A DNA stretch of 64,000 nucleotides. Origin: Octopus sinensis. Lineage: Eukaryota. Shown here one piece after another: positions 9,550 through 64,000 of this stretch. The notes under the pieces were generated by a model. That model did not search any database, had not been told where the DNA came from, and saw nothing but the letters and a program-made list of their open reading frames with translations. The translations under genes were made by a program, and so were the position numbers. Location of the stretch: assembly GCF_006345805.1 (NCBI RefSeq), contig NC_043002.1, forward strand, positions 14,198,001 to 14,262,000, written 5' to 3'. Each line of letters opens with the position of its first letter. The stretch's first letter is position 1.

Positions 9550-10530
9550 GCTATGCAGATGACACAAAAGTCTCCCACGCAATACAAAACCCCTAAAATA
9601 TTGCGCATCTGCAACATGAGCTGGACACAATATACAGGTGGGCTGAGGACAACAACATGCAGTTTAATGCAGGTAAGTTCCAGGCCCTGCGCTACTGGCA
9701 CACAAAGGTAAATGACGTGAAGACTGGATACACTGGCCCAGGAAGAATTGCAATCCCTGAGTCAAAATCAGTGCGTGACCTGGGCATTGACATGAGCAAT
9801 GATGCTCTTTCCAAATGCATATTGCTAATCTGGTGATAAAATGCAGACGGCTAGCTGGATGGATTCTCCGAACTTTCAGAACAAGAGAGAAGGAGACACT
9901 GATGGTCCTATGGAAAACATTTGTCCTCAGCCGCTTGGACTACTGCTCCCAACTTGGTCACCACACAATATAAAACAAACAGCAGAACTCGAAGCAACTC
10001 AGAGAAGCTACCACAAAGAAAATCGTCTCAATGCAAAATGTCAGCTACTGGGAAAGACTGAAGGTATTAAACCTCTTCTCCCTGGAGCGGAGGCGGGAGA
10101 GATATGCAGTTATATACATCTGGAAAATCCTGGAGGGTCTTGTCCCAAACTTTGGCATTCAAAGTTACTCCAACCGCAGAACGGGGCGCCGCTGCGTGGT
10201 GCCAAGGATTCCAACATCACCATCAAAATACAGTCCAGATACTGCAACAGCTTGGGTTTCAGAGGACCACAGCTCTTTAACATCCTCCCTAAATGCCTGA
10301 GAGACTTACATGGTGTGGATGTGGGTTTCTTTAAACTAAACTGGATCTCTTCTTGTTGGGAGTCCCAGATGAACCTACCTCACGACAGGAGACGGATGCG
10401 GGCAGCAGCATCGAACTCCCTTGTTGATCAGTGCCACGTATCAGAGGTGGATTCACAAACTAGTGTAGCTCATTCAGCGGTGGTGCCCCAGCATGGCCGC
10501 GGCCTTCGGGCTAAACATTTTAAGGATTTA
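9550..10530 (+). mobile_element. 5'-truncated LINE, same group as 13184-17111
   Basis: Starts at YADDTK; includes YSLERRRERYAVIYIWKILEG and LGFRGPQLFNILP with frameshifts. 3' end GGTGCCCCAGCATGGCC. Confidence 0.9.
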
Positions 10531-13125: not shown

Positions 13126-13183
13126 CTTCCTGTCTTCTCTCGAACATAATTAGATAGATAAACGGATAGACGGATTATCCAGC

Positions 13184-14094
13184 ATGTCCAGAGCATGGAG
13201 ACGTGACGAGCTGGATTTATTTGTACGAGCATGGGAGTGCGCCGGCGGAGATAGCCCTAGGGAGGTGATTGCGGCTGCGCTGAAGAGCAGAGGCTACAAG
13301 AGGACAGCGGCTCAGATGGAGCGAAAGAGACAGGAATTCGTGCGCTCATATGCGCTTGTACGGTCGCACATTGGCGCACTTGATGCCATCTTTGAGAACG
13401 AGCGGAGCAAAGATGGCAAGAATGGAGACGATGAAAGAAGTCACCCCCACCTGGTGGACGCCCGGGAGGAGGTTTTGAATGAGAAACCTGCCCGGGAAGT
13501 GAACCCAGGTGCAAGTTCTCCAACCGGCAGCAAGGGCCATGGAGACGGAGAACCCGGTGAAGAGGTAGAGGGAGGAAGAAGAACTAAAAGAAGGACTGGA
13601 AGAGCTAAAGGAAAGAAAAAGCTCAAGCAGGACCAAAGAGTGAAACAACCAGAAATAGAAGTGGAACCGCAAAGGATGGAACCAAACAGCGCACACGGGT
13701 GTGTATGTTCTACCTGAGAGGTTCCTGCTGGCATGGAAAGGAAGGTGCAGGCTGCCGCTTTGCACATCGGGGACCCTGCCACAGAGACACGAGGCAGATG
13801 GACAAACCATCAACACAAAGAAAAGGGATGGACCACGCACCACCTGCCCCAAAGCGGAGGTACGCAGATGTTGTGCGCGCCACAAACAGCCAACATGATG
13901 TTGTCGAAAGAGCAGCTGCTGAGCAACAATCTTTTTTGTGCATGGCACAAAAGATTGTACAGCAGCTGACCTGGCTTCATCAAACCCAAGCCCGCAGGTG
14001 GGACTACCCACTATATACCAGACCACCACAGCAAACAGACACAGGATGGACACCGCCGGCAACAACGTACACCTCACCTCGATACTCCTACTGA
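13184..14094 (+). pseudogene. LINE ORF1 (one frameshift near 13699): Myb/SANT trihelix-like N-terminus and CCCH zinc finger
   Basis: WRRDELDLFVRAWE...IAAALKSRGYKRTAAQMERKRQEFVRSY, then CMFYLRGSCWHGKEGAGCRFAH (C-x7-C-x8-C-x3-H) in the -1 frame. Confidence 0.7.
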
Positions 14095-17019
14095 ACATCA
14101 GAGGACTGCAAACACTCAGTAACAGGACAAAGATCCCGTTCCTGAGAGACTTATGCATAACACTTACAGAAACGCACCTGAAACCGGACATAGCAGATGC
14201 GGAGTTACACATACCACAGTATGCTGTACTACGGACCGACAGGAAAGAAAGGAGTCATGGAGGTGTTGCTATGTACATCCGTGAGGACCTCACACCCCAG
14301 GTCCTCTTGTCATACTCAAACTCGGTGTGTGACACACTAATTGTACATATTAGGCAACTTGATGTAGTTGTGTGTGCTACATATCGCCCTCCAGATGCCC
14401 CAAGCCATGTGGGCAAGTTTGAAGACTGCCTTATAAAAATAGAAGAAATTCTAACCACATTAGAACAACACATAGGTGTGCTTCTTATGGGAGACTTCAA
14501 TCTGCCCAATGTCAGATGGCCCGAGGGCCTTTCTCTCCCAGGAATGACAAGATGTGAACGAGGACAGGCGAGGTCCCTCCTGAACCTCATCAACACCCTG
14601 TACATGGAGCAGGTAATACTCCAACCAACCAGGGCAGGAAACACACTGGATCTCTGCTTCACAAATGACATGGATCTCATCCATAATGTGAATGAAAGAC
14701 ACCGACACTACTCTCGGATCACAACATGATAGAGCTGACCATGTACGGGCCAAAAGAGAGCACGGACATGCAGCCTACAAGAAACCCTCAAAATCTTTCC
14801 AGCTTGAACTACCATAAGGCAAACTGGAAACAAATTGAGAAAGAGATCCTCAAACAAAACTGGCCTAAATGTCTCTCCTCGCCAGACATCGACGTGAAAC
14901 TTCAACAATTCATGTCTGTAATGCAAGCCATATGCTACAAATGTGTCCCAGAGAGAAAGGCCACTGTACACAAGAACAAAATCCCAGAGAGAGGAAAAAT
15001 TTAATGAGACGGCGTACGAAATTTTCAAATCGCCTAAACAACAGATTGAAAGCAGTGAAAAGTCCCGCCTAAAAATAAAACTGTTGGAAATCGAAAAATG
15101 TCTGCAACTCTCCCATGAAAAAGAAAGAGCAGACAGAGAAGCCTGGGCTATAGAAAACATAAAATCTAACCCCAGAGCTTTCTACAGGTATGCCAAAGAA
15201 ACAGCTACAGTGCACTGTAGAATAGGGCCACTCCTCGAAAAGGATGGCACACTTACAGGAAAACCAATGAGGGTAAGTGAAATACTGAATGAGCAATTCA
15301 AGAGTGTTTTCACTCCACCCCTTGGCATCTCCAAATCACCAATCCAACTGACTTTTTTACCACTGCAGATATAAAATCAGAGGCGGCGACGATAGATTAC
15401 ATCGATATAAAGGAAGAAGATGTAACCAAGGCTATAGATGAAATGAAAACAGACTCAGCTACTGGCCCCGATGGATTCCCGGCAATCCTCCTAAAAGCAT
15501 GTAAGAGAGTCCTAGCAAGACCACTGCAGTTCCTCTTTCAGAGCTTCCTTGCAGCTGGCAAACTTCCAGGAAAACTGAAGGAAGGTAAAATATGCCCCAT
15601 TCATAAAGGAGGTAGCAGAGCGGAAGCCAAGAACTATAGACCTATCTCTCTGACCTCACACATCAGCAAGGTCATGGAACGAATAGTCAGAAGGAAGCTG
15701 ATCACCTTCCTTGAAGAGAATGACTTGCTGCCCGACACCCAACATGGTTTCCGACCAGGGAGAAGCTGTTTAACTCAGCTCCTACAACACTATGACTGGG
15801 TGCTGAAACGGCTGCTCAACCACTCAAATGTGGAAGTGATATATCTCGACTTTGCAAAGGCCTTTGATAAAGTCGATCATGGAATGATATGTCACAAACT
15901 GCGTGATCTCAACATAGTTGGAAAACTGGGAGAATGGCTTCATGACTTTCTGAAGGATAGAAGTCAGGTGGTAGTAGCCAATGGGGCCACCTCCATTAAC
16001 ACACAAATAGTGAGCGGTGTTCCGCAGGGCACTGTTCTGGGACCACTACTGTTCATAATGGCCCTCTCAGACATGCCCTCAGCCACGCAGAGAGCCACGA
16101 TCACAAGTTATGCAGATGATACAAAAGTTTCACAGGCAATACAGAACCCTGAGGACACTAAACACCTGCAATGTGAGCTGGACGAAATATACAAGTGGGC
16201 TGAAAAGAATAGCATGCAGTTCAATGCTGGAAAGTTTCAAGCTTTATACTATCAGCATGCAAAACTGAATGCAATACCCAATGAATACACTGACCCGGAG
16301 GGATTGCAATCCCAGAGGCACAATCAGTGCGTGACCTGGGTATTCACATGAGTGATGACGCGACCTTTCATGTACATGTTGCTAAACTGACAATGAAATG
16401 TAGACGGCTGGCTGGATGGATTCTTAGAACCTTTAGAACAAGAGAACAAGAAACCATGATGGTCCTCTGGAAGACACTTGTCCTAAGCCACTTTGACTAT
16501 TGCTCTCAGCTATGGTCACCATCCAGTGTCAAGTTGATCACAGAACTTGAGGCGATCCAACGAAGCTACACAAAGAAGATAGCCTCTATGCAGAATGTAA
16601 GCTACTGGGAAAGACTCAAGAGATTAAAATTATATTCCCTGGAGCGTAGGCGGGAAAGATATGCCATAATATACATCTGGAAGATCCTGGAGGGAAGTGT
16701 CCTGAACTTTGGCATCGAGAGTTACGCAAATGCCAGAACTGGGCGCCACTGCGTGGTGCCTAGGACTCCAAACCTGCCATCAAGATGTAGGACAAGATTC
16801 TGTGATAGCCTGGGCTTCCGAGGCCCACAGCTCTTCAATATCCTCCCGAAGAACCTGAGAGACCTGCATGGGGTGGATACAGATGTCTTTAAAATGAAGC
16901 TGGATCTCTTCCTGTCAGGTGTCCCAGATGAACCAACTTCACGGCAGGAGGGGCAGATGAGGGCAGCTGCATCGAACTCTCTCATGCACCAAATAGCAGT
17001 TGCTAGAAAGCCTCCATGA
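13938..17019 (+). pseudogene. LINE ORF2, APE endonuclease plus reverse transcriptase, frameshifted (CR1-group/Proto2-like; clade uncertain)
   Basis: Endonuclease motifs LLNIRGL, LTETHL, MGDFN, TRAGNTLDL. RT motifs TGPDG, YRPISLTS, QHGFR, YLDFAKAFD, GVPQGTVLGP, YADDTK. C-terminal RGPQLFNILP...LDLFLSGVPDEP. Several frameshifts between 14.7 and 16.3 kb. Confidence 0.92.
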
Positions 17020-17111
17020 AGTGAAACCAAGTAGCAACACCAAATGGCGGTGCCCCAGCATGGCCACAGCTCATAAGCTGAAACTAGAATCAATCAATCA
17101 ATCAATCAATC

Positions 17112-19529: not shown

Positions 19530-20640
19530 TCTTATTTACGAGAAAATTACAAGGAATGCATTAATCAAATTAGCTGCAGAGAAAGCATTGTTTATGCAGG
19601 CTCGTCTTTCCAGTTTACTGATTTCCTGAATTAGATTGACAGTATCATTGCAAGCTCCATAAATATTTAAAGAGAATATTAAATAGCCCTTATACGAGAA
19701 TGGCAGCTGGTTCGGTTGATACCCCATTTCTAGTCCAGGATTAAGCTGCATACAAGACAAACTACTAAATTCTTGCTGTACATACAATGTGTGTTCAAAA
19801 ATCATCCCCTTTACGGTTAACTTCAAGATATCTCACCACCAAGATATGTAAATACGATATGTAAACAAACGGCGGCGAGCTGGCAGAAACGTTAGCACGC
19901 CGGACAAAATACTTTGCAGTATTTCGTCTGCCGTTACGTTTTGAGTTCAAATTCCGCCGAGGTCGACTTTCCCTTTCATCCTTTCAGGGTCGATTAAATA
20001 AGTACCAGTTACGCACTGGGGTCGATAATTCGACTTAATCCGTTTGTCTGTCCTTGTTTGTCCTCTCTATGCTTAGCCCCTTGTTGGTAGTAAAGAAATA
20101 GGTATTTCGTTTCTCATTACGTTCTGAGTTCAAATTCCACTGAGGTCGACTTTGCCTTTCATCCTTTCGGGGTCGTTAAATTAAGTACCACTTATGAACT
20201 GGGGTCGATATAATCGACTTAATCCGTGTGTCTGTCCTTGTTTGTCCCTCTGTGTTTAGCCCGTTGTGGGCAGTAAAGAAATAAGATATGTAAATGACTT
20301 CACATAACTTAGGCGTTTCCTATCAACCTTTATAGGAGTTTAAGAAAGATTACAAACCGGTGACCTCAGCTTGACCCCACGAGTTTGTTTAGGAGTAGGG
20401 CAAGGTTGGTGGATTACTTCCGTCTTCTTTATGTTGATGGTGAAGCCAAAAGCTTTACATGCAGCAGAAAACCGGTCTAGAAGTTCCTGAGTTTCCTCTA
20501 AGGAGGTCGCTACTAGTACAGCACCATCTGCAAAAAGTAGATTACGAATAATACTGGCGCGTAGTAGTGTTCCTCGATTTTAGCTACTTAATTCTCCAAA
20601 TTTTGAATTTCTATTCGCGTATACAACAACCCATGCTGCT
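19530..20640 (-). pseudogene. Decayed RTE-clade LINE RT region, interrupted by a SINE C dimer
   Basis: Minus strand IIRNLLFADGAVLVATSLEETQELLDRFSAACKAFGFTINIKKTEVIHQP, then FTYLGGEIS resuming beyond the insertion. Confidence 0.8.
19871..20282 (+). mobile_element. SINE family C (Meta-domain-like), head-to-tail dimer
   Basis: Head GGCGGCGAGCTGGCAGAAACGTTAGC; central GTCGACTTTGCCTTTCATCCTTTCGGGGTCG...TAAGTACC resembles the MetaSINE domain as I recall it. TSD AAGATATGTAAAT at 19841-19853 and 20283-20295. Confidence 0.9.
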
Positions 20641-25648: not shown

Positions 25649-28395
25649 TCCTGCGCCTATATACTACCACACATCCACTCCTGTGCCTATATATTACCAC
25701 ACATCCACTCCTGTGCCTATATACTTACCACACATCCACTCCTGCGCCTATATAATTAACACGCATCCACTCCTGCGCCTATATACTTAACACGCATCCA
25801 CTCCTGCGCCTAAAAACTTTCCACACATCCACACCTGCGCCTATATACTTTCCACACATCCACTCCTGCGCCTATATACTTACCACACATCAACTCCTGC
25901 GCCTATATACTTTCCACACATCCACTCCTGCGTCTATATACTTTCCACACATCCACTCCTGCGCCTATATACTTACCACACATCCATTCCTGCGCCTATA
26001 TACTTACGACACATCCATTCCCGTGCCTATATACTTTCCACGCATCCACTCCTGCGCCTATATACTCACCACACATCCATTCCTGCGCCTATATACTTAC
26101 ATCACATCCACTCCTGCGCCTATATACTTACCACACATCCATTCCTGCGCCTATATAATTCCGCACATCCACTCCTGCGCCTATATACTTACCACGCATC
26201 CACTCCTGCGCCTATATACTTACCACACATCAACCTCCTGCGCCTATATACTTTCCACACATCCACTCCTGCGCCTATATACTTACCACACATCCACTCC
26301 TGCGCCTATATACTTACCACGCATCCACTCCTGCGCCTATATACTTTCCACACATCCACTCCTGCGCCTATATACTTACCACACATCCACTCCTGCGCCT
26401 ATATACTTTCCACACATCCACTCCTGCGCCTATATACTTACCACACATCCACTCCTGCGCCGATATACTTACCTCACATCCACTCCTGCGCCTATATAAT
26501 TACCACACATCCACCCCTGCGCCTATATACTTACCACACATCCCATCCTGTGCCTACATACTTACCATACATCCACTCCTGCGCCTATATACTTACCACA
26601 CATCCACTCCTGCGCCTATATACTTACCACACATCCATTCCTGCGCCTATATACTTACCACACATCCACTCCTGCGCCTATATACTTACCACACATCCAC
26701 TCCTGCGCCTATATACTTTCCACACATCCACTCCTGTGCCTATATACTTTCCAAACATCCACTCCTGCGCCTATATATTTTCCACACATCCACTCCTGCG
26801 TCTATATACTTTCCACACATTCACTTCTGCGCCTATATACTTACCACACATCCACTCCTGCGCCTATATACTTTCCACACATCCACTCCTGCGCCTATAT
26901 ACTTACCACACATCCACACCTGCGCCTATATACTTTCCACACATCCACTCCTGCGTCTATCTACTTTCCACACATCCACTCCTGCACCTATATACTTACC
27001 ACACATCCACTCCTGCGCCTATATACTTTCCACACATCCACTCCTGCGCCTATATATTTACCACACATCCACTCCTGCGCCTATATACTTTCCACACATC
27101 CACTCCTGCGCCTATATATTTACCACACATCCACTCCTGCGCCTATATACTCACCACGCATCCACTCCTGCGCCTATATACTTACATCACGTCCACTCCA
27201 GCGCCTATATACTTTCCACACATCCACTCCTGCGCCTATATACTTACAACACATCCACTCCTGCTACAACACATCCACTCCTGCGCCTATATACTTTCCA
27301 CACATCCACTCCTGCGCCTATATATTTACCACACATCCACTCCTGCGCCTATATACTTACCACACATCCACTCCTGCGCCTATATACTTTCCAGACATCC
27401 ACTCCTGCGCCTATATACTTACCACACATCCACACCTGCGCCTATATACTTTTCACACATCCACTCCTGCGTCTATCTACTTTCCACACATCCACTCCTG
27501 CACCTATATACTTACCACACATCCACTCCTGCGCCTATATACTTTCCACACATTCACTCCTGCGCCTATATATTTACCACACATCCACTCCTGCGCCTAT
27601 ATACTTTCCACACATCCACTCCTGCGCCTATATATTTACCACACATCCACTCCTGCGCCTATATACTCACCACGCATCCACTCCTGCGCCTATATACTTA
27701 CATCACGTCCACTCCAGCGCCTATATACTTTCCACACCCACTCCTGCGCCTATATACTTACCACACACCTCCATTCCTGCGCCTATATACTTTCCGCACA
27801 TCCACTCCTGCTCCTATATACTTACAACAACAACATCCACTCCTGCGCCTATATACTTTCCACACATCCACTCCTGCGCCTATATACTTACCACAACATC
27901 CACTCCTGCGCCTATATACTCACCACACATCCACATCCTCCTGCGCCTATATACTTACAATCACACGTCCATTCCAGCGCCTATATACTTTCCACACACA
28001 TCCACTCCTGCGTCATATACTTACAACACATCCACTCCTGCGCCTATATACTTTCACACATCCACTCCTGCGCCTATATACTTACCACTATCCACTCCTG
28101 CGCTATATACTTACCACACATCCATTCCTGCGCCTATATACTTTCGCACCTCAACATCCTCTGCTCCTATATACTTACAAAACTTCCAACCATCACCCCT
28201 GCGCCTATATACTTCCACACATCCACTCCTCGCCTATATACTTACCACACATCCATTCCTGCGCCTATATACTTACCACGCATCCACTCCTGCGCCTATA
28301 TACTTAACACGCATCCACTCCTGCGCCTATATACTTACCACACATCCACTCCTGCGCCTATATACTTACCATACAACCACTCCTGTGCCTATATA
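25649..28395. repeat. 31-bp minisatellite (about 88 copies) derived from the SINE B 5' end
   Basis: Unit CCACACATCCACTCCTGCGCCTATATACTTA is the reverse complement of the SINE B start ATAGGCGCAGGAGTGG(C/A)TGTGTGGTAAGTA. Internal 516-bp duplication. Confidence 0.95.
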
Positions 28396-36357: not shown

Positions 36358-36398
36358 CACACACACACATATATATATTGTGAAGTATATTTTCCCCC

Positions 36399-36765
36399 TA
36401 AATGTGGCTGACCCATATGGGAGGCTGCTACTGTAGTTTATAGCCCCAAGAAGACTTCTCCTCCAGCGGTCTATTGACACACTGTCTGTGTCCTATCAGT
36501 ATTTGCAAAGAGAATTCATCGTTCCCATCCCCAGCCTGACGTGATACACATGGACCCCTAGCCGGTGATTGTCATGCGTTGATGACGGTTTACTACCCAG
36601 AAACCCGGGTCCGTGTGCATCACGTCAGGCTGGAGATGGGAACGATGATTTCCCTTTGCAAATACTGATAGGGCACAGACAGTGTGTCATTAGCCAGCTG
36701 GAAGAGATGTCTTCCTGGGGATATAAACTGGAGTAGCATCGTCCGATATAGGTCAATCAAATTTA
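36399..36765. repeat. Foldback with about 155-bp inverted arms and a central hammerhead
   Basis: 36399-36557 matches the reverse complement of 36607-36765; the spacer holds most of an HHR fold. Confidence 0.85.
36565..36623 (+). ncRNA. Type I hammerhead ribozyme (U3.G8)
   Basis: GTGAT tgt CATGCG TTGATGA c GGT ttact ACC ca GAAAC CCGG GTC CGTGTG c ATCAC: extended stem I, palindromic ACCCGGGT stem III, GUC site after 36611. Confidence 0.7.
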
Positions 36766-37347
36766 TGTGACAAATATACATCACGATGTCGTGCTGCTAC
36801 TGTTTATATTTCGCTCAGAGATTTATTATTGCTATGGATTTACAAATTCAATACCCATACATATCTTACATCTATTTTCTTTCCTCCACCTCACTCTCTA
36901 TTTGTATCACATCGAAAATAACTATGACTTAATTTTTTCTCTCACACCGTCTCCGATTAAGAGATATCATTATTAATTAATATCCTAGAAACAGCTGTAA
37001 GACCTTCTATCTCTAAATACCCTAGTATCTATACAGCCTTGGCTTTTTTATCTTATTACGCAAAAAATTCTTATATATATATAAATAATATTGTGAAACA
37101 GTAGAGGACTCCATTTGTGGTAATGAAAATAAACATCAATGCTAGTGTAATCAGTTAGCAGTATATAAAACACAGCAGAAAAAAAAACCTGACCGGCATT
37201 TTAAACTTTCCAAAAGAGTAGCGGATACATTTAAATATCTTCTAGTCGTTGTTTTCAATGCAGGATTGGTAGACCTTTGCGATAATCAGAGTTCCAATTG
37301 AAAAAAACAGAAACACTAAACCAACGTGTCAGAAGATAGAAAGGAAA

Positions 37348-37788
37348 GGCAGCGAGCTGGCAGAATCGTTAGCACGCCGGGCGAAATGCGTAACCGTATT
37401 TCGTCTGCCGTTACGTTCTGAGTTCAAATTCCGACGAGGTCGACTTTGCCTTTCATCCTTTCGGGGTCGATAAATTAAGTACCAGTTACGCACTGGGGTC
37501 GATATAATCGACTTAATCCGTTTGTCTGTCCTTGTTTGTCTCCTCTATGTTTAGTCCCTTGTGGGCAATAAAGAAACATTGGCACGCCAGTCGAAATGCT
37601 TAGCGGTATTTCGTCAGCCGTTATACCCTGAGTTCAAACTCCGCCGAGGTCGACTTTGCTTTTCATCCTTTCGGGGTCGATAAATTAAGTACCAGTTACG
37701 CACTGAGGTCGATGTAATCGACTTACTCCATTTGTCTGTCCTTGTTTGTCCCCTCGGTGTATAGCCTCTTCTGGGCAATAAAGAAATA
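37348..37788 (+). mobile_element. SINE family C dimer
   Basis: Two tandem units; TSD AGAAGA(T/C)AGAAAGGAAA at 37331-37347 and 37789-37805. Confidence 0.9.
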
Positions 37789-43992: not shown

Positions 43993-44092
43993 NNNNNNNN
44001 NNNNNNNNNNNNNNNNNNNNNNNNNNNNNNNNNNNNNNNNNNNNNNNNNNNNNNNNNNNNNNNNNNNNNNNNNNNNNNNNNNNNNNNNNNNN
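43993..44092. other. Assembly gap (100 N)
   Basis: Run of N. Confidence 1.
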
Positions 44093-52585: not shown

Positions 52586-52605
52586 ATATATATATATAGA
52601 TACAG

Positions 52606-53279
52606 GTAAAGGACCTGGGCATCTTGGTGGATTCTTCATCTTCGCCTTCGGCCCAGTGCATTCATGCTGCCAACAAAGCACGTGGGGTTCTGTTTTTGAT
52701 TCGGCGGTCATTCGGAATGCTCACAGCAGCCATATTCCTACCGTTCTGTCACGCTGGTGAGACCCATATTGGAGTACGAGATTCAAACCTCTTCTCCTTA
52801 ACTCCTCGAAGACATACATCATCTCGAAAGAGTTCAGAAGCTGGCTACCCGCAGGGTTCTTGGTCTCAAGCATTTGTCTTATGAAGAAAGGTTGAAGACG
52901 CTCGACCTTTATTCTCTAGAAAAACGACGATGCCGTGGTGATCTCATTCTTGCTCACAACATCATAAGCGGAAAGTGTAACCTCTCGAAAGCGCTGTTCT
53001 TCACTCCTGCTCCAGAGCGTCGGCTGCAGGGTCAATCCGAAAAGCTCTATCTGCGACGATTTCATCTCAATCGAAGGAGAGGGGGCTTTCTCCGTCCGGG
53101 TTGCGGATCCGTGGAATAAGCTGCCGGACGAGATAGTGAAGATGCATACGACCGCTCGGTTCAGAGCCTCTCGACCAGAAATGGCCTGAACTCTTTTCAT
53201 GATCACCACCCTGTACATAACTCCATGTCCCCCAACATGGCCTTGCTTTTTGATTTTTGAGCCAAAGAAATTAACTTAA

Positions 53280-60033: not shown

Positions 60034-60335
<302 letters not shown>

Positions 60336-60541
60336 CGAATATAAACAAGAAGGGTAGTAATATTATTTACTACCAGGTGCCCAGCACAAAAGACGAATTA
60401 GTCATAAGACAAAAATATTATTCATATAGAAAAATATTATTCACGTAGTTATACAATTAAGGGCTCCTAAATTAAGATGCCGAGTGCTGGGAACACAAAA
60501 AGGGGATGAATTTATTGAGAGTGAAAATCAAAAACGTTTAC

Positions 60542-60645
60542 CGATAACTTTAACAACTCGTACCGCGGTTTCTGCTTCTTTCTAGCAAAACACAGAATAT
60601 GTTTGCTAAGGCTAGCTTCATCAGCGAGTCGCCTAAATTTAATCG
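60542..60645 (-). ncRNA. Type I hammerhead ribozyme, array copy 1
   Basis: Minus: GGCGACTCG CTGATGA A GCT [internal loop plus long hairpin] AGC A GAAAC CGCG GTA CGAGTTGTT; predicted cut between 60561 and 60560. Confidence 0.85.
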
Positions 60646-60995
60646 AGGTCTGCAGCGATGTGGGACCATGTGTTGAACCCGACTACTAGCAGATCTTAAC
60701 TTTTCAAATCTCTGCGCAGACGCAAAACTTACACGGCAGTATAGGGCATGCCGGGAAGAATTTTACGAATAAATCCATCATGTAATATGCGAATATAAAC
60801 AAGAAGGGTAGTAATATTATTTACTACCAGGTGCCCAGCACAAAAGACGAATTAGTCATAAGACAAAAATATTATTCATATAGAAAAATATTATTCATGT
60901 AGTTATACAATTAAGGGCTCCTAAATTAAGATGCCGAGTGCTGGGAACACAAAAAGGGGATGAATTTATCGAGAGTGGAAATCAAAAGCGTTTAC

Positions 60996-61099
60996 CGATA
61001 ACTTTAACAACTCGTACCGCGGTTTCTGCTTCTTTCTAGCAAAACACAGAATATGTTTGCTAAGGCTAGCTTCATCAGCGAGTCGCCTAAATTTAATCG
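60996..61099 (-). ncRNA. Type I hammerhead ribozyme, array copy 2
   Basis: Identical core; predicted cut between 61015 and 61014. Confidence 0.85.
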
Positions 61100-61448
61100 A
61101 GGTCTGCAATGATGTGGGACCATGTGTTGAACCCGACTACTAGCAGATCTTAACTTTTCAAATCTCTGCGCAGACGCAAAACTTACACGGCAGTATAGGG
61201 CATGCCGGGAAGAATTTTACGAATAAATCCATCATGTAATATGCGAATATAAACAAGAAGGGTAGTAATATTATTTACTACCAGGTGCCCAGCACAAAAG
61301 ACGAATTAGTCATAAGACAAAAATATTATTCATATAGAAAAAATTATTCATGTAGTTATACAATTAAGGGCTCCTAAATTAAGATGCCGTGTGCTAGGAA
61401 CACAAAAAGGGGATGAATTTATCGAGAGTGAAAATCAAAAACGTTTAC

Positions 61449-61552
61449 CGATAACTTTAACAACTCGTACCGCGGTTTCTGCTTTTTTCTAGCAAAACAC
61501 AGAATATGTTTGCTAAGGCTAGCTTCATCAGCGAGTCGCCTAAATTTAATCG
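61449..61552 (-). ncRNA. Type I hammerhead ribozyme, array copy 3
   Basis: Identical core; one substitution in the stem II internal loop; predicted cut between 61468 and 61467. Confidence 0.85.
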
Positions 61553-61902
61553 AGGTCTGCAGTGATGTGGGACCATGTGTTGAACCCGACTACTAGCAGA
61601 TCTTAACTTTTCAAATCTCTGCGCAGACGCAAAACTTACACGGCAGTATAGGGCATGCCGGGAAGAATTTTACGAATAAATCCATCATGTAATATGCGAA
61701 TATAAACAAGAAGGGTAGTAATATTATTTACTACCAGGTGCCCAGCACAAAGGAGGAATTAGTCATAAGACAAAAATATTAGTCATATAGAAAAATATTA
61801 TTCATGTAGTTATACAATTAAGGGCTCCTAAATTAAGATGCCGAGTGCTGGGAACACAAAAAGGGGATGAATTTATTGAGAGTGAAAATCAAAAACGTTT
61901 AC

Positions 61903-62006
61903 CGATAACTTTAACAACTCGTACCGCGGTTTCTGCTTCTTTCTAGCAAAACACAGAATATGTTTGCTAAGGCTAGCTTCATCAGCGAGTCGCCTAAATT
62001 TAATCG
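61903..62006 (-). ncRNA. Type I hammerhead ribozyme, array copy 4
   Basis: Identical core; predicted cut between 61922 and 61921. Confidence 0.85.
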
Positions 62007-63005
62007 AGGTCTGCAGCGATGTGGGACCATGTGTTGAACCCGACTACTAGCAGATCTTAACTTTTCAAATCTCTGCGCAGACGCAAAACTTACACGGCAG
62101 TATAGGGCATGCCGGGAAGAATTTTACGAATAAATCCATCATGTAATATGCGAATATAAACAAGAAGGGTAGTAATATTATTTACTACCAGGTGCCCAGC
62201 ACAAAAGACGAATTAGTCATAAGACAAAAATATTATTCATATAGAAAAATATTATTCATGTAGCTTTCTATATATCTATCTATTTGTTTGTGTGTATATG
62301 TGTATATGTATGTCTGTGTGCGTGCGCGCGTACTTCCGTGAGTGTATGCGTGTGTATGTGTGTCTATTTGTGTTTATGTGTATGTGTATGTGTATGTGTA
62401 TTTGGTGTGTGTGTGTGTGTGTGTTAGAGACACTGTATATAGACGTTACGATATACGTTTCGAAACAATTTCCATTGAAAAATACGTTATCCAATTTGAA
62501 GATATGCAATGAAATCCATGCAAAATAGCAGGCATTTGTAATTGTTCTCTAGACAACTGTTTATGTTACAATCAAACTTATTAGTAAATTGAAAATGACA
62601 TTTCGTTCCGTTCTTCTGTTATTTATCAACATTGCCTCGTAACCAATCATCTCTAAGTAATATTATTGTTTTGCGCCAGCTGTTGGACACTTTCCTGACA
62701 TTATGCTCCAGATTAGCTCGGCTGGATACTTGCGAACGACACATATTTATCTAAGCCATATATCTATACGTTCCTGTGTGTGGGATGTACGAATCTCTTG
62801 GTTTGCATTTGAGTGCATTTGAGCGTTTCAATTCGTGTGAATGCATATGATTTTGCGAGTGAGTCTTTGCATATGTAGTACCCCCATATATGCATTCATA
62901 CATACACGTATACGTACAAATATACATATATTATACATTACATATATATGTATATATATATATATATATACTCATATATGTTACGTTATATTATGCATAT
63001 ATATG

Positions 63006-63137: not shown

Positions 63138-63685
63138 CTCACATATATATTACATTATTTTATACAAACATATATTTATGTATATACATACACACATATA
63201 TATATCTATGTGTGTGTGTGTGTGCATACATATATTACATTATATCATACACGTAAATTTATATATATTTTTATATACATGCATTCATACATACGTATAC
63301 ATATATATGTATCCACGATCGCTCTCACACACACACACACTCACGCACACACACACACGGGCACGCATACAAGCACATATATACATATAGTAAATAGAAA
63401 GTAAGCTTATCACCATGGCGACGCATCACATCATTTACCATGTATAGCATGAAGTGTGACATATGGATGGTAAAATTTAATTCAGAAATGGCGTCAACGG
63501 TGAAAACAAGTGATTTCATAAATGCAAGTTATTAAATAATGTAATATGTCCCCTTTGAAATTACAAAACTGAATATTTTCACATGATCAATGACACAGCA
63601 TGGACATTAAAATTGCGGCTAACGTTATCTACGAAAACTCATTTACACTCTTGTGGTTTTACATTGTTAGGTATAATTACACAAT

Positions 63686-63858
63686 CGGACGGTATCCCAC
63701 AGAAGCTGCTCCGCCTCATACAAGGCTACTACCGATCGACTCGAGCACGCGTCAGGGTCTATGGTGAGCAGGCGTTCTCAACACCACGCTCCGGGACTAC
63801 CGGGGCGTAGAGGAGAGGAGTCGCGGTTACGGACCTGGTCTACGCGGACGACATCGTA
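63686..63858 (+). pseudogene. Internally deleted RTE-type RT fragment
   Basis: GIPQKLLRLIQGYYRSTRARVRVYGE followed closely by DLVYADDIV; the GVRQG motif is absent. Confidence 0.7.
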
Positions 63859-63907
63859 TATATATATATATATATATACGAGAAAGAAGCAACAAGAATG
63901 GATTAGT

Positions 63908-63998
63908 TTTTAGTACAATTGTTTCATACAAAGACAGGCTTTATTAAAAGTTGCAAATATTGCAGCAGATAAAGGTGTCCCGTACTCATCAGCTAAAA
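63908..63998 (-). ncRNA. Type I hammerhead ribozyme with long stem II
   Basis: Minus: TTTTAG CTGATGA GTAC [GGGACA/TGTCTT, CTTTAT/ATAAAG, TGCA/TGCA helices] GTAT GAAAC AATT GTA CTAAAA; predicted cut between 63914 and 63913. Confidence 0.8.
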
Positions 63999-64000
63999 CA

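What the first reader, a model, noticed from the sequence alone, without database searches (positions are those of the whole stretch)
60336..62263. 454-bp tandem array with an intact hammerhead in every full unit: candidate retrozyme / circular RNA system
Seen: four full units plus 113 bp. On the minus strand each full unit has a complete type I HHR: stem I ACTCG/CGAGT extendable with G.U pairs and a bulge to about 18 bp, core CUGAUGA, A.A-closed stem II with a long inserted hairpin, GAAA, palindromic stem III ACCGCGGT, GUA site. Core and stems I/III are invariant across copies while other positions differ. Established: tandem non-coding repeats with minimal type I HHRs (newt satellite 2, Schistosoma SM-alpha, cave-cricket pDo500, metazoan non-LTR retrozymes) self-cleave into monomers, and retrozyme monomers accumulate as circles; as I recall it, the newt motif also has A on both sides of stem II. 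Inference: this is such an element, probably in an octopus, giving 453-454 nt monomers and moved in trans by a Penelope-like RT. I cannot confirm whether this family is already described.
Basis: partly seen in the sequence, partly recalled or inferred. Interest (0 to 1): 0.93.

Follow-up and report, generated by a model that had tools for sequence, protein, structure and literature searches.

The report
Hammerhead-ribozyme tandem repeat in an octopod
A 454-bp DNA repeat, present 4.25 times in a row in what looks like an octopus-group genome, carries a self-cutting hammerhead RNA motif in every full copy. It fits the already known class of animal "retrozymes", so it is a credible new member, not a new kind of element.

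Summary
TRF finds one array at 60332-62263, period 454, 4.3 copies, 98% identity. Each of the four full units carries, on the minus strand, every conserved hammerhead core nucleotide in type I topology. Helix I is 9 bp, extendable to 19. Helix III is the palindrome ACCGCGGU, followed by a GUA|C cleavage site. Predicted monomers are 454/453/454 nt.

A descriptor loose enough to accept this motif gives 0.003 hits per 64 kb of simulated sequence. A second, unrelated hammerhead lies 1.65 kb away on the same strand (63908-63998). It matches Rfam Hammerhead_1 end to end at 19.4 bits, below threshold, and sits 35 nt from a (TA)n tract. LINE reverse-transcriptase homologs place the window in an octopod.

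Caveats:
- The array's hammerhead gets no Rfam hit at any threshold tried.
- It has an A.A mismatch where G10.1-C11.1 is normally conserved, and a 45-nt helix II.
- The invariance of the motif across copies is statistically uninformative.
- No other copy was found anywhere I could search.
- Cleavage, circles and a Penelope-like partner are untested.

Best reading: a non-LTR retrozyme-type element, a new member of a known kind. Interest is moderate.

The parts
60332..62263 (-). Tandem array: 4 full units (61810-62263, 61356-61809, 60903-61355, 60449-60902) plus a 113-117 bp partial unit (60332/60336-60448). The unit is 454 bp, GC 0.38, with no ORF longer than 70 aa stop-to-stop.
   Evidence: TRF; MAFFT; blastn of the unit against the window; ORFs.
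61913..61994 (-). Hammerhead A, unit 1: helix I 9 bp, CUGAUGA, A.A-closed helix II with a 45-nt span, GAAA, helix III ACCGCGGU. Predicted cut after A17 at 61922 (GUA|C).
   Evidence: Descriptor scan; coordinates; sequence.
61459..61540 (-). Hammerhead A, unit 2. It holds the only variant in the motif, G>A in the helix II internal loop. Predicted cut after 61468.
61006..61087 (-). Hammerhead A, unit 3. Predicted cut after 61015.
60552..60633 (-). Hammerhead A, unit 4. Predicted cut after 60561. With the extended helix I the structured region is 60541-60646.
   Evidence: The hammerhead-constrained fold is -25.1 kcal/mol against an MFE of -28.0.
60034..60328 (.). (ATCT)n/(GATA)n microsatellite abutting the 3' end (RNA sense) of the array. 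The 11-mer TCTATATATCT occurs at 60318 and again at 62267 on the other flank, but also at 60155 and 60171.
   Evidence: TRF; 11-mer positions.
62264..62424 (.). A short GATA-like stretch followed by TA/GT microsatellites, abutting the 5' end (RNA sense) of the array. Joining the two flanks reads as one degenerate (GATA)n tract.
63908..63998 (-). Hammerhead B, an unrelated sequence on the same strand: UUUUAG-CUGAUGA-[56-nt helix II, 7 bp at its base]-GAAA-CAAUUG-UA|CUAAAA. Helix III is the palindrome ACAAUUGU. Predicted cut after 63914. The element continues beyond the window end at 64000.
   Evidence: Strict descriptor (0.015 expected per 64 kb). Rfam Hammerhead_1 model positions 1-45 of 45, 19.4 bits, E 0.014 in a 121-nt search, below the gathering score of 34.
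63856..63913 (-). A 35-nt stretch 3' of the hammerhead B cut site (63879-63913), then a short (TA)n run (about 63856-63878). This looks like the 3' end of an element inserted at (TA)n.
   Evidence: Sequence. Penelope-like elements prefer (TA)n targets and carry 30-40 bp tails (PMC8557442; PMC11167929).

Best explanation
The array is a non-LTR retrozyme-type element in an octopod genome: a non-coding 454-bp unit repeated head to tail, whose minus-strand transcript carries a type I hammerhead ribozyme in every unit.

Shown here: the tandem structure; the complete hammerhead core and three-helix topology; the 8-nt palindromic helix III; the monomer sizes; the low GC; the microsatellite flanks; and a second, independent hammerhead nearby.

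Inferred from the described retrozyme pathway (PMC7229834, PMC4209133):
1. The minus strand is transcribed as a multimer.
2. Helix III is only A-U plus C-G closed by a CGCG loop, so a lone motif is weak. Two motifs of neighbouring units pair their ACCGCGGU palindromes into an extended helix III, a double hammerhead.
3. Each cuts at GUA|C, releasing 454-nt RNAs with 5'-OH and 2',3'-cyclic phosphate ends.
4. A host tRNA ligase circularises them.
5. A Penelope-like reverse transcriptase/endonuclease copies the RNA and inserts more-than-unit cDNA at AT-rich or microsatellite DNA.
6. After insertion the array has also changed at the DNA level by unit duplication or conversion.
For: - Tandem array of 4.3 x 454 bp at 98% identity.
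- All conserved core positions (C3 U4 G5 A6 N7 G8 A9, G12 A13 A14, A15.1-U16.1, H17=A) in type I order in four consecutive units. Expected by chance: 0.003 per 64 kb.
- Helix I of 9 to 19 bp.
- The hammerhead fold lies within 3 kcal/mol of the MFE, without counting core or tertiary contacts.
- The ACCGCGGU self-duplex is -16.1 kcal/mol. It has the same A-C-[palindrome]-G-U design as the experimentally cleaving coral, mussel and axolotl retrozyme hammerheads.
- It meets the operational retrozyme criteria of Li et al. 2026: a TRF repeat with at least 2 consecutive units holding a complete hammerhead, a motif MFE below -5 kcal/mol, and a unit length inside their 51-972 bp range. Most of their families have 7 units or fewer.
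- GC 0.38, no tRNA-like part and no ORF with relatives.
- The array sits in a (GATA)n tract.
- A second hammerhead on the same strand, supported by Rfam at sub-threshold level, ends 35 nt from (TA)n. That is the layout of a Penelope-like 3' end.
- The source is an octopod. 235 Rfam Hammerhead_1 hits are reported in the giant squid genome (PMC6962438), and retrozymes are shown in another mollusc, the mussel.
Against: - No Rfam Hammerhead_1 match for the array motif, even at E<=10 on 121 nt.
- A.A replaces the highly conserved G10.1-C11.1 pair. Proximal helix II is only 3 bp, and the canonical loop 1/loop 2 contacts cannot be recognised.
- The unit is seen at one locus only. It is absent from the rest of the window and from every collection I could search.
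- Four near-identical copies give no covariation and no evidence of selection.
- The circular fold is only moderately structured: 62% paired, z = -2.4.
- No Penelope-like ORF is present in the window; the only clear reverse transcriptase is a LINE.
- Units 1 and 4 are identical, while units 2 and 3 share two variants (columns 247 and 387). A single rolling-circle cDNA followed by independent decay does not predict this.
Confidence: 0.65

Rival explanations
1. A relic: the repeat descends from a hammerhead-bearing element (a retrozyme or a Penelope-like terminal repeat), but the ribozyme is now inactive. The A.A mismatch and weak helix II would be the damage. The array would then be an ordinary local satellite that grew by unequal crossing-over, with no RNA cycle.
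For: No Rfam hit. A.A at 10.1/11.1. A single locus. The relationships among units, (u1,u4) and (u2,u3), point to turnover at the DNA level. There is no sign of selection.
Against: All 13 core nucleotides and all three helices are intact in all four units. A mismatch at the same pair (U.U) occurs in axolotl HHR_Amex2, which cleaves, and does so better as a dimer. Units at 98-100% identity indicate a young array. CpG observed/expected is 1.1, so there is no decay signal.
Confidence: 0.2
2. Part of an autonomous Penelope-like element and not a separate non-autonomous family: a run of pseudo-LTRs left after loss of the ORF, or belonging to the element whose 3' end (hammerhead B) enters the window at 64000.
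For: Penelope-like elements form partial tandems and carry type I hammerheads in their pseudo-LTRs. Retrozymes are reported to be close relatives of pseudo-LTRs. Hammerhead B lies on the same strand 1.65 kb away.
Against: The array unit and the hammerhead B region share no sequence. No RT or GIY-YIG ORF adjoins the array. A LINE fragment and microsatellites lie between the two. The Penelope-type minimal hammerhead features, an extra nucleotide after A9 together with G10.1-C11.1, are absent.
Confidence: 0.1
3. A chance resemblance: an ordinary tandem repeat that happens to contain CUGAUGA, GAAA and complementary flanks.
For: The descriptor was written after seeing the motif. Rfam is silent.
Against: The very descriptor that includes those freedoms yields 0.003 hits per 64 kb. 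On top of that the motif falls inside a tandem repeat of retrozyme size, has the family-typical palindromic helix III, and has a second hammerhead next to it.
Confidence: 0.05

Closest known systems
Mussel (Mytilus galloprovincialis) non-LTR retrozyme, 350-390 bp repeats (PMC7229834)
   Same: Also a mollusc. A non-coding AT-rich tandem repeat of a few hundred bp with one type I hammerhead per unit. Helix III is an 8-nt palindrome of the same form (ACGCGCGU there, ACCGCGGU here). The canonical loop 1/loop 2 contacts are not recognisable in either.
   Different: The mussel motif has a 4-bp helix II with G10.1-C11.1, a 5-nt loop and a GUC site. Here helix II is A.A-closed with a 45-nt span and the site is GUA. 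The mussel family has about 5000 copies and proven circular RNA, whereas here one locus is seen and no RNA data exist. There is no sequence similarity outside the core.
Axolotl HHR_Amex2 / retrozyme Rtz_353, and newt satellite 2 (PMC7229834)
   Same: A mismatch at the base of helix II (U.U there, A.A here). A GUA cleavage triplet. Helix III of two pairs capped by a palindromic tetraloop (ACACGUGU). Expected to work best as a double hammerhead between neighbouring units.
   Different: It is a vertebrate family with about 60,000 motifs, short helices I and II, and measured activity (22% as a monomer in 1 h, much more as a dimer). The octopod motif has a much longer helix I and helix II and is untested.
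Minimal hammerheads in the pseudo-LTRs of Penelope-like elements (PMC4209133)
   Same: Type I topology, palindromic 15.2-16.2 and loop 3, a larger than usual helix II, and association with microsatellite or AT-rich insertion sites. Hammerhead B in this window fits best: 7 bp at the base of helix II, 35 nt to the element's end, and (TA)n beside it.
   Different: Those motifs keep G10.1-C11.1 and an unpaired nucleotide after A9, have a short helix I of 4-5 bp, and flank an RT/GIY-YIG ORF. The array motif has none of these, and no such ORF is in the window.
Rfam RF00163 Hammerhead_1
   Same: The same core and topology. Hammerhead B aligns to all 45 model positions.
   Different: Hammerhead B scores 19.4 bits against a gathering score of 34. 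The array motif is not reported at all.

Membership tests
Hammerhead ribozyme, type I | Conserved core CUGANGA ... GAAA ... UH, with A15.1-U16.1 and H17 not G | tested here: met
   CUGAUGA, GAAA, U16.1 and A17 are present in all four units and in hammerhead B.
Hammerhead ribozyme, type I | Three helices around the core, with helix I open and helices II and III closed | tested here: met
   Descriptor scan; constrained fold of -25.1 against an MFE of -28.0 kcal/mol.
Hammerhead ribozyme, type I | G10.1-C11.1 pair at the base of helix II (highly conserved; PMC4209133) | tested here: not met
   A.A in the array motif and G.U in hammerhead B. Precedent for a mismatch here: U.U in axolotl HHR_Amex2.
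Hammerhead ribozyme, type I | Score at or above the Rfam RF00163 gathering threshold (34 bits) | tested here: not met
   The array motif gives no hit at gathering score or at E<=10. Hammerhead B scores 19.4 bits, E 0.014.
Hammerhead ribozyme, type I | Tertiary contacts between loop 1 and loop 2 | tested here: inconclusive
   A 4x5 internal loop sits where loop 2 would be, but helix I runs 9 bp before its first interruption. The canonical nucleotides are not recognisable, as in the mussel.
Hammerhead ribozyme, type I | Mg2+-dependent self-cleavage at the H17 site | not testable with these tools
   Needs in vitro transcription of monomer and dimer.
Non-LTR retrozyme (PMC7229834; Li et al. 2026 preprint) | Short head-to-tail tandem repeat (150-450 bp in the 2020 paper; 51-972 bp family consensus in the 2026 preprint) | tested here: met
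   454 bp x 4.3. This is at the upper edge of the 2020 range and inside the 2026 range.
Non-LTR retrozyme (PMC7229834; Li et al. 2026 preprint) | At least two consecutive units, each with a complete type I hammerhead | tested here: met
   Four consecutive units. This uses my own relaxed descriptor; whether the published rnabob descriptors accept a 45-nt helix II is unknown.
Non-LTR retrozyme (PMC7229834; Li et al. 2026 preprint) | Non-coding, no LTRs, low GC (<50%) | tested here: met
   GC 0.38. The longest open stretch is 70 aa and has no relatives. No tRNA-like part. No terminal repeats other than the units themselves. PBS and PPT were not searched for specifically.
Non-LTR retrozyme (PMC7229834; Li et al. 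2026 preprint) | Short helix III capped by a small palindromic loop (double-hammerhead design) | tested here: met
   ACCGCGGU, with a self-duplex of -16.1 kcal/mol. Same design as the validated constructs.
Non-LTR retrozyme (PMC7229834; Li et al. 2026 preprint) | Monomer RNA predicted to be highly self-paired | tested here: inconclusive
   Circular MFE of -103.7 kcal/mol, 62% paired, z = -2.4 against mononucleotide shuffles.
Non-LTR retrozyme (PMC7229834; Li et al. 2026 preprint) | Multiple dispersed copies in the genome (a mobile family) | not testable with these tools
   No eukaryotic genome collection is searchable by DNA. There is one locus in the window. Indirect searches were all empty.
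Non-LTR retrozyme (PMC7229834; Li et al. 2026 preprint) | Expressed as linear and circular monomer RNA | not testable with these tools
   No RNA data are available.
Non-LTR retrozyme (PMC7229834; Li et al. 2026 preprint) | Co-occurrence with hammerhead-bearing Penelope-like elements | tested here: inconclusive
   Hammerhead B next to (TA)n looks like a Penelope-like 3' end. No Penelope-like ORF lies within the window.
Penelope-like element pseudo-LTR | Direct repeats flanking an RT plus GIY-YIG ORF | tested here: not met
   No such ORF is next to the array. The only clear reverse transcriptase is a LINE with an APE endonuclease at about 13.9-17 kb. For hammerhead B the answer lies beyond the window end.

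The most novel reading that the evidence does not exclude
Octopods may carry a lineage-typical hammerhead architecture: a non-Watson-Crick or wobble 10.1/11.1 pair and a 45-56 nt rod-like helix II. Two unrelated families with this design occur within 4 kb of each other here. Such motifs largely escape Rfam and standard descriptors. If so, cephalopod genomes would hold a large uncounted population of self-cleaving repeats and small circular RNAs, and the A.A-closed form would be an active natural core variant.
Probability: 0.25. Interest if true: 0.55.

Novelty: new member of a known kind. Interest (0 to 1): 0.4.

Why it matters
If it is active, it would extend ribozyme-made small circular RNAs (retrozymes) to cephalopods. 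I found no description of them there in the searchable literature; the only trace is a count of 235 Rfam hammerhead hits in the giant squid genome. It would also give a natural test case for a hammerhead with an A.A pair at 10.1/11.1 and a long helix II, a form that current covariance models miss. That has a practical consequence: Rfam-based annotation probably undercounts such elements. The element class, its mechanism and its link to Penelope-like elements are already established in other animals, including another mollusc. A specialist would therefore find this expected, not surprising.

Tried and rejected
- **Rfam cmscan.** The whole window at gathering score, 2 kb at E<=10, and 121 nt at E<=10 gave nothing for the array motif. 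Only hammerhead B appeared, at sub-threshold level.
- **Custom covariance model.** I built one from four experimentally cleaving retrozyme hammerheads (coral, mussel, two axolotl) taken from the supplement of PMC7229834. With filters off it mis-aligned the array motif (9.1 bits, E about 3) and missed hammerhead B. A model with a short helix II cannot bridge the long inserts, so this test is uninformative.
- **Other copies by way of called ORFs.** Exact look-ups of two unit ORFs and one other window ORF found nothing on record. The word-indexed protein search with the 70-aa open stretch found nothing. The full HMMER search of representatives gave one hit, P0121, which is a translated unrelated tandem repeat at 23% identity; I rejected it as spurious.
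- **Exact-pattern DNA scans.** Scans of metagenome contigs and viral contigs were empty. Neither collection is expected to hold cephalopod DNA.
- **Octopod contigs.** The 22 kb fetched around LINE homologs (L001, L002) contain no hammerhead.
- **tRNA-derived SINE origin.** ARAGORN finds nothing.
- **Target-site duplication.** The 11-mer TCTATATATCT flanks the array but recurs inside the microsatellite, so it cannot be told apart from microsatellite sequence.
- **Invariance of the core across units as evidence of selection.** Rejected on the binomial test.
Full report

Yes. Tandem Repeats Finder reports a single array at 60332-62263 with period 454, 4.3 copies, 98% matches and no indels. Aligning the minus-strand units gives four full units (61810-62263, 61356-61809, 60903-61355, 60449-60902) and a partial unit of 113-117 bp, with 13 variable columns in all. 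BLASTN of one unit against the window finds only these copies. It also shows that units 1 and 4 are 100% identical, while units 2 and 3 are 98.2% and 98.7% identical to them.

**2. The motif.**

On the minus strand each full unit reads GGCGACUCG-CUGAUGA-A-GCU...AGC-A-GAAA-CCGCGG-UA|CGAGUUGUU.
- Every conserved hammerhead position is present in type I order: C3 U4 G5 A6 U7 G8 A9, G12 A13 A14, A15.1/U16.1 and A17.
- Helix I has 9 contiguous pairs. RNAfold extends it to 9+5+5 = 19 bp through a 1x1 loop and a 2-nt bulge.
- Helix II is an A.A juxtaposition, three Watson-Crick pairs, a 4x5 internal loop and a 12-bp hairpin, 45 nt in all.
- Helix III is the 8-nt palindrome ACCGCGGU. In a lone motif that means A-U and C-G closed by CGCG.
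- The predicted cuts lie after 61922, 61468, 61015 and 60561, giving monomers of 454, 453 and 454 nt with GC 0.38.
- Forcing the hammerhead pairs and leaving the core single-stranded gives -25.1 kcal/mol. The unconstrained MFE is -28.0, so the active fold is accessible even before core and tertiary contacts are counted.

**3. More than chance?**

I wrote a type I descriptor loose enough to accept this motif: helix I of at least 5 bp, a mismatch allowed at 10.1/11.1, at least 3 further helix II pairs, a helix II span up to 60 nt, and a 15.2-16.2 pair. In 300 first-order Markov simulations of the window it hit 0.003 times per 64 kb. In the real window it hit the four array units and one more place.

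**4. A second hammerhead.**

That extra place is 63908-63998 on the minus strand, at the very edge of the window: UUUUAG-CUGAUGA-[56-nt helix II, 7 pairs at its base]-GAAA-CAAUUG-UA|CUAAAA. Helix III is again a palindrome, ACAAUUGU.
- It also passes a stricter descriptor that requires 10.1/11.1 to pair, for which 0.015 hits per 64 kb are expected.
- In a 121-nt Rfam search it aligns to all 45 positions of Hammerhead_1 at 19.4 bits, E 0.014, below the gathering score of 34.
- It shares no sequence with the array unit.
- Thirty-five nucleotides after its cut site comes a short (TA)n run, followed by a LINE reverse-transcriptase fragment on the other strand.

Penelope-like elements (PLEs) carry hammerheads in their terminal repeats, prefer (TA)n targets and leave 30-40 bp tails (PMC8557442; PMC11167929). 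So this looks like the 3' end of such an element whose body lies outside the window. Two independent hammerheads within 4 kb make a chance origin for either one very unlikely.

**5. What fails.**

Hammerhead B tolerates a 56-nt insert and still scores 19.4 bits. The shortfall of the array motif therefore comes mainly from the base of helix II, where A.A replaces G10.1-C11.1. That pair is described as highly conserved (PMC4209133).

I could not confirm this: the Rfam consensus shows G..C. A documented precedent is the U.U mismatch in axolotl HHR_Amex2. That motif also has a GUA site and a palindrome-capped helix III. It cleaves 22% in an hour as a monomer and much better as a dimer (PMC7229834).

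With 13 variable columns in 454, one or none in the 82-nt motif has P = 0.29.

**6. Source organism and surroundings.**

The window is AT-rich (about 36% GC) and full of microsatellites. It holds a LINE with an APE endonuclease and a reverse transcriptase at about 13.9-17 kb. The best named relatives of that reverse transcriptase are from Octopus (69%) and Argonauta hians (74%), with unnamed hits up to 82%.

The array lies inside a degenerate (GATA)n tract, with 295 bp of it on one side and about 25 bp on the other. An 11-mer repeats on both flanks but also inside the microsatellite, so a target-site duplication cannot be claimed.

**7. Comparison with what is known.**

Cervera and de la Pena (PMC7229834) define non-LTR retrozymes as follows:
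- 150-450 bp tandem repeats with one type I hammerhead per unit;
- low GC, and no LTR, PBS or PPT;
- expressed as 170-400 nt linear and circular RNAs;
- co-existing with hammerhead-bearing PLEs.

They are shown in a coral, a mussel and the axolotl, and inferred in many invertebrate phyla. The validated constructs have helix III sequences ACAGUACUGU, ACGCGCGU, ACACGUGU and ACAUGU. That is the same A-C-palindrome-G-U design as ACCGCGGU and ACAAUUGU here.

Li et al. [quoted passage not shown] They report consensus lengths of 51-972 bp, mostly 7 units or fewer, and a close relationship to PLE terminal repeats. The array meets these sequence criteria.

The features it cannot be tested for here are genome-wide copy number, RNA expression, circularity and cleavage. 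I found no paper describing retrozymes in cephalopods. The giant squid genome paper lists 235 Rfam Hammerhead_1 hits without further analysis.

**8. Mechanism and a complication.**

The most likely working is the published retrozyme cycle: minus-strand multimeric transcription, double-hammerhead cleavage through the palindromic helix III (self-duplex -16.1 kcal/mol), ligation to a 454-nt circle by a host tRNA ligase, and reverse transcription and insertion by a Penelope-like enzyme at AT-rich or microsatellite DNA. Only the sequence anatomy is shown; every step is inferred.

One observation does not fit the simplest version. If the whole array were one rolling-circle cDNA from a single circle, the units would start identical and diverge independently. 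Instead units 1 and 4 are identical, and units 2 and 3 share two variants (columns 247 and 387). So either the template was heterogeneous, or the array has since changed by unit duplication or conversion at the DNA level. The circular monomer is only moderately structured (62% paired, z = -2.4).

**9. Searches for relatives.**

No tool here searches eukaryotic genomes by DNA. The indirect routes were all empty or spurious:
- exact look-up of unit ORFs;
- protein-space searches with the 70-aa open stretch;
- pattern scans of metagenome and viral contigs;
- a scan of 22 kb of fetched octopod sequence.

This says little about copy number in the source genome.

**10. Verdict.**

The locus is best read as a retrozyme-type hammerhead repeat of an octopod, a new member of a known kind, with two unusual features: an A.A pair at 10.1/11.1 and a long helix II. 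Those features explain why Rfam misses it. Confidence in this reading is about 0.65. The main rival is an inactive relic evolving as a local satellite (0.2).

Noticed in passing
window 63856-63998 (minus strand): A second, unrelated type I hammerhead at the window edge: Rfam Hammerhead_1 at 19.4 bits, full model length. It is followed by 35 nt and then (TA)n, which looks like the 3' end of a Penelope-like element lying beyond position 64000.
   Followed up: partly
window 36377-36787: A foldback with 181-nt arms, 85% complementary, and a 49-nt spacer. The spacer edge (36573-36617, + strand) holds a hammerhead-like string with U instead of C3: CAUGCG-UUGAUGA-...-GAAA-CCCGGG-UC-CGUGUG, again with a palindromic helix III. 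It scored only 10.8 bits, E about 1, with my weak custom model. It may be chance or a decayed motif.
   Followed up: no
window 60449-60902 and 61810-62263: Units 4 and 1 of the array are 100% identical, while the two units between them differ at 6-8 sites and share two variants. This indicates unit-level duplication or conversion, or a heterogeneous template.
   Followed up: partly
window 25649-28395: A large minisatellite with a 31-bp unit (TCCTGCGCCTATATACTTACCACACATCCAC), about 88 copies at 85-91% identity and strong C over G skew (GC skew -0.71). It creates a spurious 585-aa ORF.
   Followed up: no
window about 13150-17020 (+ strand): A LINE-type retrotransposon with a weak Myb/SANT-like match, an APE-type endonuclease (13938-14729) and a reverse transcriptase (15443-16351). 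Its closest named relatives are from Octopus and Argonauta hians. Further LINE C-terminal fragments lie at about 9974-10297 and 52600-53116.
   Followed up: partly
window 63559-63807 (+ strand): A fragment of a LINE reverse transcriptase (...GIPQKLLRLIQGYYRSTRARVRVYGE...). It is cut off at the (TA)n tract next to hammerhead B, suggesting a nested insertion.
   Followed up: no
window 19919-20283 and 37372-37786: Two 2-copy tandem duplications (183 and 210 bp) of a related SINE-like sequence containing a B-box-like GAGTTCAAA(T/C)TCC. ARAGORN calls no tRNA.
   Followed up: no
window 43993-44092: A run of 100 N, that is, an assembly gap.
   Followed up: no
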